Source: Macrostomum lignano
Taxonomy: Eukaryota
Length of the DNA: 64,000 bases
NCBI GenBank assembly: GCA_002269645.1
Contig: NIVC01001382.1
Span: forward strand, 1-64,000
Reading direction: 5' to 3'
Part shown: positions 1,616-64,000 of the stretch, piece after piece
How the letters are laid out: each line of letters starts with the position of its first letter
Position numbering within the stretch: the first letter of the stretch is position 1
The notes under the pieces: model-generated
What the model saw: the letters and a program-made list of their open reading frames with translations, nothing else
Told to the model about the DNA's origin: nothing
The model's database searches: none
Translations under genes and position numbers: made by a program

Positions 1616-33030
<31,415 letters not shown>

Positions 33031-33374
33031 TCCTAGTGCAGCTGCAGGATTTCGATTCGTCTTCAAACCGAAGAAATGCTGAATTCTACTAGCCAATAAT
33101 CCATGCCAATCATCTGTACTGATCTTATTTATAATAGTAATTAGTATTATAACCAGAATTCTATTGGAAGTAATGCTTTCGCAAAGATAATTTCTTCTCC
33201 CTAAGTCAGTTTGGCTTTTATGGTGGGCGCCAGTGCTAACTGATCCGGGATTGACTGGCTGGAATCAGCGATTCTGATTGGCTGCTGACCAGCTTCCAGG
33301 ATGTCATTTCCAAGAAATGCTCGTAACTAGCATGATTCTAAAAAAGCTGACGCAAATCCTACTTGCTATGTTAG

Positions 33375-34480
33375 CGCCAACTATGACACATGATAGCGCC
33401 ACTATGACACACATGATAGCGCCACTATGACACACATGATAGCGCCACTATGACACAGATGATAGCGCCACTATGACACAGATGATAGCGTCACTATGAC
33501 ACAGATGATAGCGCCACTATGACACAGATGATAGCGTCACTATGACACACATGATAGCGTCACTATGACACAGATGATAGCGCCACTATGACACAGATGA
33601 TAGCGCCACTATGACACAGATGATAACGCCACTATGACACAGATGATAGCGTCACTATGACACATATGATAGCGTCACTATGACACAGATGATAGCGCCA
33701 CTATGACACAGATGATAGCGTCGCTATGACACATATGATAGCGCCACTATGACACAGATGATAACGCCACTATGACACAGATGACACATATGATAGCGTC
33801 GCTATGACACACCTGATAACGCCACTATGACACAGATGATAGCGCCACTATGACACACATGATAGCGTCACTATGATACACACATGATAGCGTCACTATG
33901 ATACACACATGATAGCGCCACTATGACACACATGATAGCGCCACTATGACACACATGATAGCGCCACTATGACACACATGATAGCGTCACTATGATACAC
34001 ACATGATAGCGCCACTATGACACACATGATAGCGTCACTATGATACACACATGATAGCGCCACTATGACACACATGATAGCGCCACTATGACACAGATGA
34101 TAGCGTCACTATGACACACATGATAACGCCACTATGACACACATGATAACGCCACTATGACACACATGATAACGCCACTATGACACAGATGATAGCGTCA
34201 CTATGACACACATGATAGCGTCACTATGACACACATGATAACGCCACTATGACACAGATGATAGCGTCACTATGACACACATGATAGCGTCACTATGACA
34301 CACATGATAACGCCACTATGACACAGATGATAACGCCACTATGACACACATGATAGCGTCACTATGACACACATGATAACGCCACTATGACACACATGAT
34401 AGCGTCACTATGACACACATGATAACGCCACTATGACACACATGATAGCGTCACTATGACACACATGATAGCGTCACTCG
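33375..34480. repeat. Minisatellite, 23-bp unit ATGATAGCG(C/T)CACTATGACACA(C/G)
   Basis: Direct inspection. Confidence 0.95.
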
Positions 34481-34939: not shown

Positions 34940-36303
34940 GGACAGGGCGGATGGGGAGAGGGGCGGATGGGGAGAGGGGCGGATGGGGAAAGGGGCGGAT
35001 GGGGAGAGGGGCGGATGGGGAAAGGGGCAGATGGGGAGAGGGGCGGATGGAGAGAGGGGCGGATGGGGAGAGGGCGGATGGGGAGAGGGGCGGATGGGGA
35101 GAGGGGCGGATGGGGAAAGTGGCGGATGGGGAGAGGGGCGGATGGGGAGAGGGGCGGATGGGGAAAGGGGCGGATGGGGAGAGGGGCGGATGGGGAAAGG
35201 GGCGGATGGGGAGAGGGCGGATGGAGAGAGGGGCGGATGGGGAGAGGGGCGGATGGGGAAAGGGGCGGATGGGGAGAGGGGCGGATGGGGAAAGGGGCGG
35301 ATGGGGAGAGGGGCGGATGGGGAAAGGGGCGGATGGGGAGAGGGGCGGATGGGGAGAGGGGCGGATGGGGAGAGGGGCGGATGGGGAAAGGGGCGGATGG
35401 GGAGAGGGGCGGATGGGGAAAGGGGCGGATGGGGAGAGGGGCGGATGGAGAGAGGGGCGGATGGGGAGAGGGACGGATGTGGAGAGGGACGGATGGAGAG
35501 AGGGGCGGATGGAGAGAGGGGCGGATGGGGAGAGGGGCGGATGGGGAGAGGGACGGATGTGGAGAGGGACGGATGGAGAGAGGGGCGGATGGAGAGAGGG
35601 GCGGATGGGGAGAGGGGCGGATGGGGAAAGGGGCGGATGGGGAGAGGGGCGGATGGAGAGAGAGGCGGATGGGGAGAGGGACGGATGTGGAGAGGGACGG
35701 ATGGAGAGAGGGGCGGATGGAGAGAGGGTCGGATGGGGAGAGGGGCGGATGGGGAGAGGGGCGGATGGGGAGAGGGACGGATGTGGAGAGGGACGGATGG
35801 AGAGAGGGGCGGATGGAGAGAGGGGCGGATGGGGAGAGGGGCGGATGGGGAGAGGGGCGGATGGGGAGAGGGGCGGATGGGGAGAGGGGCGGATGGGGAG
35901 AGGGGCGGATGGAGAGAGGGGCGGATGGGGAGAGGGACGGATGTGGAGAGGGACGGATGGAGAGAGGGGCGGATGGAGAGAGGGGCGGATGGGGAGAGGG
36001 GCGGATGGGGAAAGGGGCGGATGGGGAGAGGGGCGGATGGAGAGAGGGGCGGATGGGGAGAGGGACGGATGTGGAGAGGGACGGATGGAGAGAGGGGCGG
36101 ATGGAGAGAGGGTCGGATGGGGAGAGGGGCGGATGGGGAGAGGGGCGGATGGGGAGAGGGGCGGATGGGGAGAGGGGCGGATGGGGAGAGGGGCGGATGG
36201 GGAGAGGGGCGGATGGGGAGAGGGGCGGATGGGGAGAGGGGCGGATGGGGAAAGGGGCGGATGGGGAGAGGGGCGGATGGGGAGAGGGGCGGATGGGGAG
36301 GGG
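34940..36303. repeat. G-rich minisatellite, 16-bp unit GGATGGGGAGAGGGGC
   Basis: Direct inspection. Confidence 0.95.
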
Positions 36304-36892
36304 GGCATGTGGGGATTACAGAGAGTAGGCTACGGGAAATGCTAGGAAAACCCTGGAAAGCCTTGCCAACAGCATCAAATTAAAAATGCAATCAAAAATT
36401 GTTCAAAAGCATGTCATAGTGGCACTTCTGTTTCACAAGTAACTCAGACCTTTATGCAGAATTTTTAGCGTTAAAAAATTGCCTGTTGGCACTCCCAAAC
36501 ACTACCCTGACAGCTGAGCCAATATGAGTGCAAAAAGGTCGTACTCTCGGAGAGCTGTCAATCAGGGGTGAATACGCTTGTAAAATATTCCTCATCAAAT
36601 TTCAGTAGCTACCTGTTGTAGTTTATCGAAAGGTTTCAGATTGATTGTTATGAAAAATTTAGTATATTTTCTCAGTCAACTGAGAAGACATAAGCTGTCG
36701 AGAATTAGCGCGACACGATTTTAGTATTTTGTTATAATCGACTAGATTATATTTTTCAATTTTGATTTCTGAGGTGAAGCAGCTCGTCAGCCAATCTTTT
36801 TCTGGTTCTTGCCAATCCCATGCAGAGCTTTCTGATCAAAATGATTTTCGATCATGTAGGTTTAGAACTTTTTAGAAAGGACAGGAAATGGA

Positions 36893-52212: not shown

Positions 52213-55200
52213 TCAACCGCGCTTAGACTTCCCCTCGGCTAGCCTGGCCCTGATGTTGCTCAGGCGGCCCTGCATTCGCTTCACTTTGCGCATCATCTGC
52301 GGAATCAGGCGTGCAGGATCTCCCAGCTCAACTTCGCCAACCAGTTTGGCCCGCTGGCCACGCATCGCGAAAGCCTGCAGAGTGAGGAAGTAGATGATTC
52401 GGTGCTTACTGAACGTCCTTCGGCGCAGCACGATTTCTTCGTGGCGCAGCGTCTCCCAGATTGTTACGACCCAGCGCGCCAACTCGCCCAGAATGCTCAG
52501 CGGAGGCGGCAGCGGCGATCGAACCATGAACTCTTCGAGCAAGTCGTATCTTTCGAACTGCCACATGGCCATCGACTTCTTGTCGATCTCGTCGACAGTC
52601 TTGGAGAAGGACGCAACGATGAGGTTTAGGAGCAGGACGGACACGATAATGATGTAGATGGTCATTATTATATTAGGCACGATAACTTGGCCCAGCGGAT
52701 GCGGACACTTCTTGCTGTCCGCGCAGTCTTTTCCAGACACCAAGTCGGAGCTATACTCGCCAACCATGGCGTAGAAAGTGATTTTGAACATGCTCTGGAA
52801 GATGTCCGCTCCCGAGGTTTGCGTCGGATTGCCCATGTAGTAGCCATTTGGAAACAGCATGGAGTGGATCATGATGCCGAATCCGAACATCATGATAGCC
52901 AGCATGATCAGGAACGGTACGAAGTCTCGCGTAATCATTACTGATATCATCTTGAGCTTCGGTCCGAGGGTTTCCATCACAGTTGACACATAAAGCAGAC
53001 GCATCCAGTACACGAGGCAAGCCATCTGCAGAAGAAACCGAGTCCACCAATAGTACATGTCGGTGAACACGTACTTGTAGCTATCGGTAGCGGTGTTCTT
53101 TAGCATAGGCATTCGCATGCAGAATCCGACAAAGCTGAGGGTCAGACCGATTGTGTCCAGTATGTTCCACCCATCTGTTATGTGATTCAGCACGGATCCG
53201 TTGATGCGGGCGTGATTGATCTCGTGCAACTCCTCGAGGAAGAAGCCGAGCAGAAATAGATACACAATTATCTCAGCCATAGAGATTTGGTATTCGAACT
53301 TAACCACCACAACGTAAGAGAAGAAACCAATAAAGATTATGTGAGCCAATATATGGTAGTGAAACTTGACAGCCGGTGTGAAATAGAATCCGAACATGGT
53401 GCGCGCGTACAAGCCGATCACATTTAGGAAAAAGTTCCCGCCCATCGGTCGGCCAGACTCGTGCAGAATCGTTTCTTTCCACATGACGCCAGTCTTGTCG
53501 TCTGGCTTGGCGGAATTATTCGGGTCAGTTGGAGGCTGGACGAGGTCACATCCTGTTCTTTCTCGGTTTTTTCTTCGGCAACTACTTCGTCGGCCTCGGT
53601 CTCGCTGTCCTCAGGATCGTCAATATCGTCGTCACTTGAGATTACGACGGCCTCGATGCGATCAGTCTGGGCCGTCTCGCCAGGAAAACTGCCCTCCAGA
53701 TGACAGGTGGTGATCCACAGCTTGCGCAGCAGTACAAACAGCAGCGGATTGAATGGTATCAAACCGAGTGCGATCAGGAATTCCCGATAGAATGAGCTCG
53801 TGTGGTACAGTCGCTTGAACCACTCTCGATCCACGCCGCCCTGCACCGCCTGCATGACCATGAAAGAGTCGCTCTGGCCGTGGCTGGCGAGCCCCATGCA
53901 GGTAAGGTCACCGTAGGCCGGCAAGCGCTGGCGGAGGAAGTTGATGGCTACCATTTTCTTTTCGCTAGTGTCGATGGTATTGACAGAACGAACTAGCGTC
54001 ATGCAGATGCTTTCAACTCTGTCAGCCACCTGTTCCATGGTTTTCTTAGTTGGTCTGGGAATGCCAGAGATGACCTGCAGCTTTCGCAGCAGAGCCACGC
54101 AGAATAAGCCATTAGGCAGGATGTCAAACTGCTCGCTCTTTAAAAGCTCCTCTGTCAGATGGAATCGTCCAGACATCACTGACCATACGGTGAGGGTCCC
54201 CGTAGGGTCTCGAAGGAATTTTCTATTCTGGTCTTCGATCGGCTCTATCAGTGGAAGTTTCAGCCTATTGTTAAAGAACTTCGTCATGAGATCAGGCCGC
54301 CACGTGCCTCGTTCTTTGTCGATAAACGTCTTGTGCATCAAGGCTACCATCCCAGTAGATCCAATCTCTGAGCAGTTTTCATACATTATCTCGATGCTGT
54401 CTTCGAGACACTTCTGGATCTTTGGCCATAACGTCGTTCCGAACATAATAGTGGTTAGCAGCTCAACGTCTTCTCTAAATAGTACCAGCTTGCGAACCAT
54501 ATTAACAAAATTCGGTATGCAATCTGCTTCTATCAACATGGACGAAAGATTGTTGGCCGCGATCAGCTGTACCACTCGGCGGAATTCAATGAAATCGATG
54601 CGATCGTCGCATGCGATTCGATTGATAGTCTCTTGCTTCTCCTCATCCGATAGCTTCACCGTTTTGTGGTGGGCAGTGAGCACTGGACTCTCCACTGGAT
54701 TCTCCATGTCGTCGTCGATAGCGTCAAGAACCTGGATCACTCGGTTGAAGTGCTCGCACTCAATAAGCGCATTAATGCTCGGGCAGTCTTCAGGCACCAT
54801 GCTGGCAAAGTAGTCAGCCAATCCAGACAGAGTGTTCTGGTTGCCCATCCGCAGGACAATGTCCATCGGTGTGTGCCTGTCATCGTCGTATTTACGCACG
54901 CTGGCGCCGCGCTCCATCAGCAGTTTCATCAGCGGCAGAGACTGGGCCAGAGCCGCGTAATGCAGCGGCGTTCTATCGTTGGCACCGCGAGCGTCAATAT
55001 CGGCGGTGCCTTTCATTAGGAGACGGGAAATCACCACTTGGCCGTCTTGGCAAGCCTGATGCAGCGGCATGTTTCCAGCCTCATCCGGCAGATTGCAGTC
55101 GGCTCCAGCAGCCATCAGGATTTTAATTAGACGTGGCTCCTCGACCACGCATGCGGCGTGCAGCGGCATCTGGATGTCTTCGTCCGGCTCGTTCGGATCG

Positions 55201-55532
55201 AACTTGATAGTCAGCAGGTACTGGGTAGCTGCCAGAGCTTTTGCTCGAATAGCCGTGTGCAAGCAGTTCTTCTTGCTGCTGTCTTTGTAGACCATGTGTT
55301 TTAGGCTATTGTCGCCCAGTCGATAAAGCAGCTCGAGAACATCCGATCGGTCCTCTCGGCTGGCCAGGATGCACAGGGGTGTGCCGCGAAGCACAGACGC
55401 TTCGCCAGTGATGTAATCCGGACTGCTCTGAAGCAACGAGGACAGGCGATCCAGATCCTCATTGTAGTAGGCCTCCAGCACGGCATCGCCAGTTGTACGG
55501 CTTAATGTTCTTTGCCTCTCTCGCCAATCCAT
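52213..55532 (-). CDS. TRP cation channel: six ankyrin repeats fused to a TRPM-type MHR4, 6TM, TRP box and coiled coil; about 1106 aa once a single -1 frameshift near 53570 is corrected
   Basis: ORFs 55532-53424 and 53484-52213 overlap in different frames. Ankyrin cores: GTPLCILA, KNCLHTAI, QMPLHAAC, NMPLHQAC, RTPLHYAA, HTPMDIVL. MHR4-like: TLTVWSVMSGRFHL...LRQRLPAYGDLTCMGLA...VQGGVDREW. Membrane domain: FYFTPAVKFHYH, LGPKLKMISVM, VLLLNLIVASFSKT. TRP box: MWQFERYDLLEEF-RSPLPPP. Confidence 0.92.
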
Positions 55533-62987: not shown

Positions 62988-64000
62988 CTAATTTTCTACA
63001 TAATCCCCTCCAGGGTCAGATACTTCTCCATGCAGTGTCGCCATCTCTCCAGGCCATTTGTGTAGAAGGCAGGAGGCTGTGCAGCAAGCCACTGTATGGT
63101 AGCCTTCTTGGCAGCCTCTTTGCTGTCATGTCAAACTCCCTTGATCGCCTCCTTCAGCTTTGGAAACAAAAAAAAGTCTGAAGGAGCCAAATCAGGGCTG
63201 TACAGAGGATGCTGAAGTATTTCCCAGCATAAATCTCGCAGAGCCTCTTGGCACAGTCAAGAAGTGTGGGCTAGTGCATTGTTGTGGTGGAAGAGCACTC
63301 CATGGTGCAGCTTGCCAGGTCACTTTTTGGCCAGTTTGGTGCGGAGCTTTCGCAAAAGCAACTCGTAGTAGATGGCATTGATGGTTTTCTGGCTTTCTAG
63401 GAAGTCAACCATCACAACTCCCTCAGCATCCCAGAACACAGTCGCCAAGACCTTTGCTGCTGACCGCTCGGCACGGAACTTCTTAGGACCCACTGAACCA
63501 CGTGGCAGCCACTCCTTAGACTGGACTTTGGACTCGGGATTGTACTGATATATCCACATTTCATCGCCGGTCACCATCGCATCCAGGCGGTTCAGCAGGC
63601 TGATGGCACATTCAGTGCGCTGAACCTGGTGTTCAGGCTGCAACAGCTGCAGTACCCAGCAGGCACTCAGCTTGCTCAGACCAAGGCTGATGGTGACAAT
63701 TGAGTGGGCACTGCCGTGAGAAATACCCACTACCTCAGCTATCTCATCAATAGTCACACAGCAATCCTGATCAATTAGCTGCTGCATAGCTGCCACATTG
63801 TCTTCTATGCTCAATGTCGTTGGCCTGCCAGACTGCTAGGCATCTTTCACGGATTCTTGGCCTTCCTTAAAGGCTTGAATCCAGTAGTAAAGCATCGGAT
63901 CAGATGGCGCAGTATCACCGTAGACCTTCTTGAAGGCCTCAATAATGTCGGCTGGCTTCTAGCCAAGTTTCACTAGAAACTTTGCATTGATGCAAGCTTT
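62988..64000 (-). mobile_element. Mariner (DD34D) transposase pseudogene, cut off by the window end
   Basis: SGRP, WV(L)(Q)LL for WVPRLL, VTGDEMW, KVLATVFWD, HP(L)YSPDLAPSDFFLF; in-frame stops and a short deletion before the first catalytic D; TIR not identified. Confidence 0.93.

What the first reader, a model, noticed from the sequence alone, without database searches (positions are those of the whole stretch)
52213..55532. Ankyrin-TRPM chimeric channel: ankyrin repeats in place of the TRPM SLOG (MHR1/2) domain
Seen: six ankyrin repeats (about aa 50-235), then a region with clear TRPM MHR4 signatures (LTVWSVM..GR, LRQRLPAYGDLTCMGLA, VQGGVDREW), a TRPM-like S1 entry (FYFTPAVKF), a WQFERY TRP box with RSPLPPP, and a short C-terminal coiled coil. 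No NUDT9H or kinase domain is present. Established: canonical TRPMs lack ankyrin repeats and begin with MHR1/2, whereas ankyrins mark TRPA/C/N/V. Inference: this is a domain-swapped TRP lineage that may have a different gating input. It may also be relevant to flatworm TRPM pharmacology, since the praziquantel target is a TRPM. Whether this architecture is already described could not be checked.
Basis: partly seen in the sequence, partly recalled or inferred. Interest (0 to 1): 0.72.

Follow-up and report, generated by a model that had tools for sequence, protein, structure and literature searches.

The report
Flatworm ankyrin-TRPM channel (TRPM-MCLZ type)
This is a real Macrostomum lignano ion-channel gene in which ankyrin repeats stand where TRPM channels normally carry their SLOG domain, but that architecture is already known from the schistosome meclonazepam target TRPM-MCLZ, so it is a new free-living relative and not a new kind of channel.

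Summary
Window 52213-55532 (minus strand) is a single-exon gene for a protein of about 1106 aa. In order it has six ankyrin repeats, a TRPM MHR3/4-like helical region, a disordered acidic linker, a TRPM-type S1-S6 channel with TRP box, and a C-terminal helix. It has no SLOG, NUDT9H or kinase domain. The two ORFs are split by a 1-nt deletion between 53533 and 53532. A collinear second copy in the same Macrostomum lignano assembly (PAA90938.1) is intact.

The "ankyrin in place of SLOG" reading holds, but it is not new. Schistosoma mansoni TRPM-MCLZ (Smp_333650), the meclonazepam-activated channel, is described as lacking MHR1/2/SLOG and carrying N-terminal ankyrin-like repeats.

The window gene belongs to a clade with 100% bootstrap support. 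That clade contains at least 9 M. lignano paralog groups plus trematode and cestode proteins. The trematode and cestode proteins reproduce the published TRPM-MCLZ pocket residues, spacing and lineage variants. The window protein keeps most pocket residues (H727, H731, E768, D793, R845) but has Tyr at the S4 position that limits drug sensitivity.

What may be new is modest. The family exists, and is expanded, in a free-living early-branching flatworm. Some flatworm TRPMs also carry both ANK and SLOG. Placement of the clade relative to other TRPM clades is unresolved.

The parts
52213..55532 (-). Whole coding region of the ankyrin-TRPM channel gene. It is a single exon of about 1106 codons, split here into two ORFs by a 1-nt deletion.
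   Evidence: ORFs. End-to-end alignment with paralog P0121 (31% identity over about 1150 columns, E 2e-164). Intact sister copy P0122/PAA90938.1 of 1106 aa. An in-frame stop lies 13 codons upstream of the ATG.
54801..55385 (-). Six ankyrin repeats (aa 50-244).
   Evidence: Pfam Ank_2 3.6e-31, Ank 3.7e-18 and related models. Six AF2 helix pairs, the last five 33 residues apart, at pLDDT about 85-93. Coordinates checked by translation.
54507..54800 (-). Helical region between ANK and MHR3/4 (aa 245-342). It is conserved within the family (DDRIDFIEF motif) and has no detectable SLOG remnant.
   Evidence: Family alignment A2. hhalign confidence against canonical TRPM N-termini is about 0-0.2 across aa 246-342; only the short ANK-proximal stretch aa 216-245 reaches 0.2-0.7. 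AF2 helices 253-351.
53700..54506 (-). TRPM homology region MHR3/4-like (aa 343-611).
   Evidence: Pfam PF25508 TRPM2-like at aa 433-558. hhalign of the family N-terminus against canonical TRPM N-termini: probability 99.3%, E 1.8e-20, P0122 216-611 aligned to P0144 480-929, with confidence 9 over about aa 440-580. This is the only hit of a canonical TRPM N-terminal HMM in the six-frame window (E 1.1e-14).
53440..53699 (-). Disordered acidic linker (aa 612-698). It is variable in length among paralogs and contains the frame break.
   Evidence: AF2 pLDDT 26-39 over aa 612-698. The linker is about 150 aa longer in P0121.
53532..53533 (-). Frameshift site. One base is missing relative to the sister copy (the G of CTG, codon 667).
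   Evidence: Pairwise DNA alignment of the two copies: sister TCCAGCCTGCCAACTGA, window TCCAGCCT-CCAACTGA. Sequence read.
52495..53388 (-). TRPM-type channel domain (aa 716-1013): S1-S4 voltage-sensor-like domain, S5, pore helix, S6, TRP helix and the PLPPPL motif.
   Evidence: PDB phmmer with the TMD alone: the top 60 matches are all TRPM, led by nvTRPM2 6co7 at 1e-30. Residue-level alignment. AF2 helices 720-745, 752-777, 788-812, 826-852, 871-893, 908-924, 946-975 and 980-1004. Foldseek top hits are TRPM2/4/5/8/3, E down to 4.6e-17.
52753..52764 (-). Predicted selectivity-filter motif VGEY (aa 924-927).
   Evidence: It aligns to YGEL of nvTRPM2 and YGEV of TRPM3. Translation checked.
52546..52566 (-). 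TRP box MWQFERY (aa 990-996).
   Evidence: It aligns to VWKFQRY and IWKFQRH of TRPM2/TRPM3. Translation checked.
52222..52317 (-). C-terminal long helix (aa 1073-1104), a candidate tetramerisation coiled coil.
   Evidence: AF2 helix 1073-1104. The coiled-coil role is inferred from TRPM structures, not tested.

Best explanation
The locus is one copy of a Macrostomum lignano gene for a TRPM-MCLZ-type channel. This is a tetrameric, non-selective and probably Ca2+-permeable cation channel of the TRPM lineage.

Its cytosolic N-terminus is ANK(6) followed by MHR3/4, in place of the usual SLOG(MHR1/2) followed by MHR3/4. It has no C-terminal enzyme domain. Gating is most likely driven through the S1-S4 ligand pocket and the TRP helix. 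These are the same elements that meclonazepam engages in the schistosome ortholog. A TRPM-style intracellular Ca2+ site (E768, E771, N790, D793 and E1000/1001) is largely preserved. Nucleotide or ADP-ribose sensing by SLOG or NUDT9H is absent.

Shown here: the domain order, TRPM affinity of the MHR3/4 region and the TMD, clade membership, and conservation of pocket residues.

Inferred: ion selectivity, Ca2+ dependence, tetramerisation through the C-terminal helix, and the role of the ANK domain (protein docking or regulatory input).

This window copy carries a 1-nt deletion in the disordered linker. As assembled it would truncate the protein before S1. The collinear second copy is intact, so the deletion is either an assembly indel or a very recent inactivation of one allele or homeolog.
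For: Gene structure:
- Domain content comes from Pfam.
- The sister copy is one continuous ORF.
- In paralog P0121, ANK, MHR and S1-S4 lie on a single uninterrupted exon.

TRPM affinity:
- The TMD matches TRPM and nothing else in the top 60 PDB sequences.
- The AF2 model (pLDDT 75.4, pTM 0.68) matches TRPM cryo-EM structures.
- hhalign maps aa 343-611 onto canonical MHR3/4 at 99.3% probability.
- No SLOG is found in the protein or in any frame of the window.

Family:
- An exhaustive search finds a distinct high-scoring group whose top members score 220-711 bits, against about 100-125 bits for canonical TRPMs.
- Every group member of adequate length that was scanned carries Ank and no SLOG; all but P0141 and P0152 also match Ion_trans and/or PF25508 in Pfam.
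- The members come from M. lignano, Opisthorchis, Dicrocoelium and Schistocephalus.
- Neighbour-joining (NJ) on MHR4+TMD gives the ANK clade 100% bootstrap.

Link to TRPM-MCLZ:
- Published Sm.TRPM-MCLZ pocket residues, their spacing, the cestode-specific variants, the Plagiorchiida Tyr946 and the Opisthorchis duplicated channel exon are all reproduced in the neodermatan members (PMC12861061, PMC10788528).
- The literature states that TRPM-MCLZ lacks SLOG, has ankyrin-like repeats, and conducts cations and Ca2+ when activated (PMC11731825, PMC10788528).

Selection: the two copies differ by 6 synonymous and 3 nonsynonymous changes, pN/pS 0.15.
Against: - No functional or expression data for the Macrostomum gene could be obtained here.
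- The gene structure differs from the published three-exon TRPM-MCLZ layout: one exon here and four in paralog P0121.
- Two pocket positions important for the drug differ. Y1117 is F1002 here, and S4 H946 is Y848. Pharmacology may therefore not carry over.
- The frameshift may mean that this particular copy is non-functional.
- In a TMD-only NJ tree the whole-clade bootstrap was only 36%. The 100% value needs the MHR4 region added.
- The trees are distance-based, not maximum-likelihood.
Confidence: 0.87

Rival explanations
1. The window copy is a pseudogene. The 1-nt deletion is real, the locus makes at most a 702-aa soluble ANK-MHR fragment, and only the other copy encodes a channel.
For: The deletion is not in a long homopolymer (CCT|CCA). 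The public annotation of this contig calls only the 702-aa product. M. lignano carries many near-identical duplicates, so one copy can decay freely.
Against: Apart from this single base the two copies differ by only 9 substitutions in 3321 nt, with pN/pS 0.15. There are no other stops or indels. Residual single-base indels are the typical error of long-read assemblies (my own knowledge). The deletion lies in a disordered linker of variable length.
Confidence: 0.35
2. The ANK-TRPM proteins are a separate TRP family, sister to TRPM+TRPS, that kept ancestral ankyrin repeats. On this view they are not TRPMs that lost SLOG.
For: The root of the MHR4+TMD tree is unresolved, and midpoint rooting separates the ANK clade from all other TRPMs. 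Deep nodes in the TRPN-rooted TMD tree have bootstrap below 20%. The S1 His-His signature is absent from the SLOG-bearing TRPMs examined. Large TRPM surveys did not sample flatworms.
Against: The family was found only in flatworms among 1.84 billion representatives. That fits a lineage-specific derivation better than an ancient family lost everywhere else. MHR3/4, the TRP box and the PPPL motif are canonical TRPM features. Himmel et al. infer an ankyrin-free TRPM-TRPS ancestor (PMC7306681). In the TRPN-rooted tree the clade nests among TRPMs, though without support.
Confidence: 0.1
3. The ANK-channel fusion is an annotation or assembly artefact that joins an ankyrin-repeat gene to a neighbouring TRPM gene.
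For: Flatworm gene models are often fused or split. The Schistocephalus genome annotation splits the locus into three proteins, and the Opisthorchis model fuses two channel domains.
Against: In the window and in the sister copy the ANK, MHR and TMD parts form one ORF without introns. P0121 has them on one exon. A 6.8-kb Logan contig carries a continuous 3219-nt ANK+channel ORF. The S. mansoni cDNA was cloned and is functional (PMC10788528).
Confidence: 0.01

Closest known systems
TRPM-MCLZ (Schistosoma mansoni Smp_333650 and its orthologs in trematodes, monogeneans and cestodes), the meclonazepam-activated TRPM channel
   Same: Both have N-terminal ankyrin repeats and no SLOG/MHR1/2, and neither has a NUDT9H or kinase domain. 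Both have TRPM-type MHR3/4, S1-S6 and a TRP helix. They share a clade at 100% bootstrap. The S1 His-His pair, S2 Glu, S3 Asp and S4 Arg of the ligand pocket are conserved, as H727, H731, E768, D793 and R845.
   Different: The window gene comes from a free-living macrostomorph and is one of at least 9 lineage-specific paralog groups, whereas parasites have a single ortholog. It is a single exon, against three exons in the parasites. The pocket differs at Y864 (F here), I892 (L), Y1117 (F) and T1121 (S). The S4 determinant is Tyr, the low-sensitivity state in schistosomes. No functional data exist for it.
Canonical TRPM channels (for example Nematostella TRPM2 6co7, and vertebrate TRPM2/3/7/4/5/8)
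   Same: The TMD, the TRP box (WQFERY against WKFQRY), the PPPL motif, the GE pore motif shared with nvTRPM2 and TRPM3, the MHR3/4 fold and a C-terminal helix.
   Different: The SLOG (MHR1/2) domain is absent and six ankyrin repeats take its place. There is no NUDT9H or alpha-kinase domain.
Flatworm TRPMs with ANK upstream of SLOG (M. lignano Mlig003066 / P0144; Clonorchis sinensis KAG5447154 / P0155)
   Same: They are flatworm TRPMs with an N-terminal Ank_2 match (32.9 bits in each, cutoff 27.3).
   Different: They keep a full LSDAT_euk SLOG domain (76-80 bits) and a full-length PF25508 domain. They group with SLOG-bearing flatworm TRPMs (bootstrap 81%) and not with the ANK-only clade.
TRPN/NOMPC and other ankyrin-bearing TRP families (TRPA, TRPC, TRPV)
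   Same: N-terminal ankyrin repeats followed by a six-TM TRP channel. NOMPC is Foldseek hit number 3.
   Different: TMD sequence similarity is much lower, about 20-27 bits for the two TRPN TMDs whose scores were printed (partial matches) against 58-110 bits for TRPMs. Those families have no MHR3/4 region.

Membership tests
TRPM-MCLZ-type (ankyrin-TRPM) channels | N-terminal ankyrin(-like) repeats with no MHR1/2/SLOG domain | tested here: met
   Pfam finds Ank families and no LSDAT. hhalign finds no counterpart of the SLOG core. The definition is taken from PMC11731825 and PMC10788528.
TRPM-MCLZ-type (ankyrin-TRPM) channels | Phylogenetic grouping with recognised TRPM-MCLZ orthologs | tested here: met
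   NJ on MHR4+TMD gives the ANK clade 100% bootstrap, with the M. lignano subclade sister to the subclade holding Opisthorchis, Dicrocoelium and Schistocephalus. Those proteins were identified as TRPM-MCLZ orthologs from the published pocket residues, their spacing and variants, and the duplicated exon 3 (PMC12861061). Caveats: Sm.TRPM-MCLZ itself was not in hand, and the method is distance-based.
TRPM-MCLZ-type (ankyrin-TRPM) channels | Conserved VSLD pocket residues (H827, H831, Y864, E868, R943, Y1117 in Sm numbering) | tested here: inconclusive
   H727, H731, E768 and R845 are conserved. Y864 is F764 and Y1117 is F1002. The S4 946 position is Y848.
TRPM-MCLZ-type (ankyrin-TRPM) channels | Activation by (S)-meclonazepam with Ca2+ entry | not testable with these tools
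   This needs heterologous expression. Tyr at the S4 position and Phe at the Y1117 position predict low sensitivity, by analogy with the published mutants (PMC10788528, PMC12861061).
TRPM-MCLZ-type (ankyrin-TRPM) channels | Three-exon gene with the last exon encoding the whole channel domain | tested here: not met
   The window gene and its sister are single-exon. Paralog P0121 has four exons, with S1-S4 on the ANK/MHR exon. This is a gene-structure trait of the parasite orthologs, not a protein-level definition.
TRPM (melastatin) family in the strict sense | N-terminal MHR1/2 = SLOG domain | tested here: not met
   No LSDAT_euk or LSDAT_prok match. No SLOG-like ORF in any frame of the 64-kb window.
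TRPM (melastatin) family in the strict sense | MHR3/4 region, TRPM-type TMD, and TRP box followed by a proline-rich motif | tested here: met
   PF25508 at 29 bits. hhalign probability 99.3%. PDB top 60 matches all TRPM. WQFERY...PLPPPL aligned to TRPM2/3.
TRPS (soromelastatin, ced-11-like) | SLOG and Nudix domains; no ankyrin repeats | tested here: not met
   The window protein has ankyrin repeats and lacks both SLOG and Nudix. The definition is from PMC7306681.
TRPN / TRPA / TRPC / TRPV | TMD closest to that family | tested here: not met
   The TMD-only PDB search gives TRPM for all of the best 60 sequences. The TMDs of two of the five TRPN proteins in hand (P0053, P0056) gave partial matches of 27 and 21 bits; scores for the other three were not printed.

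The most novel reading that the evidence does not exclude
The ankyrin-for-SLOG TRPM architecture arose before parasitism, at or before the base of Rhabditophora. It then diversified into a multigene sensory family in free-living Macrostomum, with at least 9-10 paralog groups. The flatworm ANK+SLOG TRPMs would be surviving intermediates of a stepwise route: ANK gained upstream of SLOG, then SLOG lost. In the strongest form the clade would be a family-level TRP lineage that TRPM surveys have overlooked because they did not sample flatworms.
Probability: 0.2. Interest if true: 0.5.

Novelty: new member of a known kind. Interest (0 to 1): 0.3.

Why it matters
TRPM-MCLZ is a validated anthelmintic target whose natural stimulus and physiological role are unknown. 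It cannot be studied genetically in most parasites. Macrostomum lignano is a transgenic, RNAi-amenable laboratory flatworm, so a clear set of co-orthologs there offers a tractable way to ask two questions: what ankyrin-TRPM channels sense, and what the ankyrin domain contributes in place of SLOG. The finding also pushes the origin of the architecture back to before the parasitic flatworms. It does not reveal a new kind of channel.

Tried and rejected
1. A 44-nt GT..AG mini-intron (about 53504-53547) as the cause of the frame change. Rejected because the intact sister copy reads straight through this stretch and differs by one base only.

2. A homopolymer (CCC to CC) error as the cause. This was my first reading from the protein. 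The DNA alignment shows that the missing base is the G of CTG, not a C in a run.

3. All three word-indexed homology searches were of little use. The full-length query was swamped by generic ankyrin proteins. The non-ANK query and the 14-sequence profile returned only 2-3 M. lignano proteins. The exhaustive representative search was what found the family.

4. A segment I meant as a NUDT9H probe, taken from P0222, overlapped its TMD. That column is meaningless and was ignored.

5. The TMD-only NJ tree could not resolve the clade (36% bootstrap) or its position. Adding MHR4 resolved the clade but left no outgroup.

6. A search for an upstream SLOG exon found nothing. The only features upstream are a mariner remnant and repeats.

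7. Supplementary tables of the TRPM-MCLZ papers are not held, so accession-level identity with the published orthologs could not be checked.

8. The species of P0133 (Logan run DRR639838), P0141 and P0152 could not be determined.
Full report
**What is at the locus**

Two minus-strand ORFs, 55532..53424 (702 aa) and 53484..52213 (423 aa), overlap by 61 nt in different frames.

- The first ORF carries strong ankyrin-repeat matches (Ank_2 108 bits). It also has a match just above threshold to Pfam PF25508 "TRPM2-like domain" at aa 433-558.
- The second ORF has no Pfam match on its own. Even so, it matches TRPM transmembrane domains in the PDB and nothing else among the best 60 sequences. These are Nematostella TRPM2 at 1e-30, then TRPM2, 3, 7, 5, 1, 8 and 4 down to 8e-15.
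- No SLOG/LSDAT, NUDIX or kinase domain is found.
- The contig is NIVC01001382.1 of the Macrostomum lignano assembly GCA_002269645.1.

**The frame break**

The 90% cluster of the 702-aa product contains a second M. lignano protein, PAA90938.1 (BOX15_Mlig011337g1, 1106 aa). It reads straight through the junction (...EKEQDVTSSSLPTDPNNSAKPDDKTGVMWKE...).

- Its locus (NIVC01000100.1) is collinear with window 46.6-58.9 kb at 97-98.6% identity.
- Across the 3321-nt CDS the two copies differ by nine substitutions, six synonymous and three not, giving pN/pS 0.15. They also differ by one missing base in the window, the G of CTG at codon 667, between 53533 and 53532.
- My earlier idea of a 44-nt intron is therefore unnecessary and was dropped.
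- The gene is a single exon. An in-frame stop lies 13 codons upstream of the ATG.
- Whether the deletion is an assembly indel or a real lesion in one copy cannot be decided from the sequence.

**Is the ANK-channel fusion real?**

Yes, on several independent grounds.

- The sister copy is one continuous ORF.
- A paralog only 31% identical (P0121, BOX15_Mlig019746g1) aligns end to end with the window protein across ANK, the middle region, the TMD and the TRP helix (E 2e-164).
- In that paralog's gene, ANK repeats, the MHR-like region and S1-S4 sit on one uninterrupted 2.2-kb exon.
- A Logan contig carries a continuous 3219-nt ANK+channel ORF.
- The S. mansoni member was cloned as cDNA and is functional (PMC10788528).

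**Anatomy**

An AlphaFold2 model of the intact copy was built with a 14-sequence family alignment (pLDDT 75.4, pTM 0.68). In order it shows:

- six ankyrin helix pairs (aa 50-244);
- an all-helical region (aa 245-611);
- a disordered acidic linker (aa 612-698), which contains the frame break;
- pre-S1, S1-S6 with a pore helix, and the TRP helix (aa 980-1004);
- a long terminal helix (aa 1073-1104).

Foldseek places the model with TRPM2, TRPM4, TRPM5, TRPM8 and TRPM3 cryo-EM structures. NOMPC intrudes at rank 3, most likely because it also has ankyrin repeats.

A profile-profile comparison of the family N-terminus with canonical TRPM N-termini aligns aa 216-611 to the MHR3/4 part at 99.3% probability (E 1.8e-20). 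Confidence is near maximal at aa 440-580 and close to zero before about aa 340. So MHR3/4 is retained and nothing corresponds to the SLOG core.

An HMM of canonical TRPM N-termini was searched at maximum sensitivity against all six frames of the window. It hits only this MHR4 stretch, so no SLOG exon lies upstream or anywhere else in the 64 kb.

**Channel features**

Aligned to nvTRPM2, hTRPM2 and TRPM3, the protein has:

- S2 ...LEELHE, where TRPM2 has EE.RQ;
- S3 WNILD, with N and D conserved;
- the pore motif VGEY, aligned to YGEL and YGEV;
- the TRP box WQFERY followed by LLEEF...PLPPPL.

From general knowledge of TRPM structures, these positions form the intracellular Ca2+ site (E, Q, N and D plus a Glu in the TRP helix). 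A Gly-Glu filter is typical of the divalent-permeable TRPMs. Ca2+ permeability and Ca2+ dependence are therefore plausible, but they are inferred only.

**The family**

An exhaustive phmmer search with the non-ANK part against 1.84 billion representatives gave 1411 hits. The top members of a distinct group score 220-711 bits, well above canonical TRPMs at about 100-125 bits.

- Every member of adequate length that I scanned carries Ank repeats and no SLOG. All but P0141 and P0152 also match Ion_trans and/or PF25508 in Pfam.
- Named members are at least nine M. lignano paralog groups (Mlig011337, 012389, 030565, 020550, 019746, 022043/007691, 023207, 033956/026745 and 004154), plus the more divergent P0267. 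The others are Opisthorchis viverrini and O. felineus, Dicrocoelium dendriticum, and Schistocephalus solidus.
- On S1-TRP alone, an NJ tree rooted with TRPN supports the M. lignano subclade (100%) and the neodermatan subclade (100%). The whole ANK clade gets only 36%, and the deep nodes are unresolved.
- Adding the MHR4 block (458 columns, 71 sequences, 300 replicates) gives the ANK clade 100%. The M. lignano subclade (100%) is sister to the subclade holding the parasite proteins (99%). That tree has no outgroup, so the position of the clade relative to other TRPMs remains open.

**Comparison with what is known**

Himmel et al. 2020 state that ankyrin repeats are absent from TRPM and TRPS and infer an ankyrin-free ancestor (PMC7306681). 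A 2026 survey of TRPM evolution sampled no flatworms (PMC13143021).

The parasitology literature, however, already describes exactly this architecture.

- Sm.TRPM-MCLZ (Smp_333650) is the channel activated by the anthelmintic benzodiazepine meclonazepam. [quoted passage not shown]
- It "lacks the NH2-terminal MHR1/2 or SLOG domain" (PMC11731825).
- Sixty-three orthologs in trematodes, monogeneans and cestodes have been catalogued (PMC12861061).

I could not fetch Sm.TRPM-MCLZ itself, so I tested the link through published residues.

- The pocket positions are L826, H827, H831, Y864, E868, I892, D893, R943, H946, Y1117, R1120 and T1121. In the Dicrocoelium protein they recur with spacing identical through S1-S4, and four residues shorter between S4 and the TRP helix. 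Eleven of the twelve residues are identical, and position 946 is Tyr, as published for Plagiorchiida.
- The two cestode-type proteins carry the published cestode variants F826, E893, F946, K1120 and S1121.
- The Opisthorchis model contains two tandem channel domains. This matches the reported duplicated exon 3a/3b.

The parasite half of my clade is therefore TRPM-MCLZ, and the M. lignano genes are its co-orthologs.

The window protein has Y726, H727, H731, F764, E768, L792, D793, R845, Y848, F1002, R1005 and S1006 at these positions. The S1 His-His pair is shared by nearly all clade members and is absent from the SLOG-bearing TRPMs I examined. Tyr at the S4 position and Phe at the Y1117 position predict poor meclonazepam sensitivity, by analogy with the published mutants. 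This is an inference.

**What may be new**

- The family exists in a free-living, early-branching rhabditophoran and is expanded there into many paralogs. The published analyses I could read cover parasites only.
- Two flatworm TRPMs (M. lignano Mlig003066 and Clonorchis KAG5447154) carry an Ank_2 match (32.9 bits, cutoff 27.3) upstream of a full SLOG domain. This leaves open a gain-then-loss route instead of a one-step swap. They group with SLOG-bearing flatworm TRPMs, not with the ANK-only clade, so this remains a hypothesis.

**Verdict**

The structural interpretation is correct, but the architecture is already known as TRPM-MCLZ. The relevant drug link is meclonazepam, not praziquantel. 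This is a new member, in fact a paralog family, of a known kind, in a tractable model flatworm. Interest is modest.

Noticed in passing
window 5650-10253: A 4.6-kb pure (CTAT)n microsatellite of about 1151 copies at 99% match. It creates a spurious 1550-aa ORF.
   Followed up: partly
window 6-44527 (many arrays, e.g. 6-1527, 12428-13305, 17093-17965, 18506-19438, 24039-25696, 33368-34478, 34945-36306): The window is unusually dense in minisatellite arrays with 16-34-bp units and 20-85 copies each. Several units share a GGCGCC/GCGCCA core. The long ORFs at 23.0-23.5, 31.2-31.7 and 34.9-36.4 kb, on both strands, are repeat artefacts.
   Followed up: no
window 2356-5420 (+): A degraded LTR-retrotransposon remnant. 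Fragments of gag/PNMA-like, reverse transcriptase (RVT_1, 32 bits) and integrase (rve, 36 bits) lie in different frames. It was not reconstructed.
   Followed up: partly
window 63320-64000 (-): A mariner-type transposase remnant (Transposase_1, 64 bits) with internal stop codons, about 8 kb upstream of the channel gene.
   Followed up: partly
L003 1331-3884 versus window about 57650: The otherwise collinear sister locus has a 2.5-kb insertion upstream of the gene that the window lacks. The 3' flank is much more diverged (about 4% plus indels) than the 5' flank (0.3%).
   Followed up: no
L002 51-1545: Upstream of paralog Mlig019746 on its contig lies a second, partial and diverged copy of the C-terminal channel part (aa 959-1280, 45-95% identity). 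This is a tandem fragment duplication, reminiscent of the duplicated channel exon reported in opisthorchiid TRPM-MCLZ.
   Followed up: no
P0144 (M. lignano Mlig003066) and P0155 (Clonorchis sinensis KAG5447154): These are flatworm TRPMs with an ankyrin match N-terminal to a complete SLOG domain. They may be intermediates in the replacement of SLOG by ANK.
   Followed up: partly
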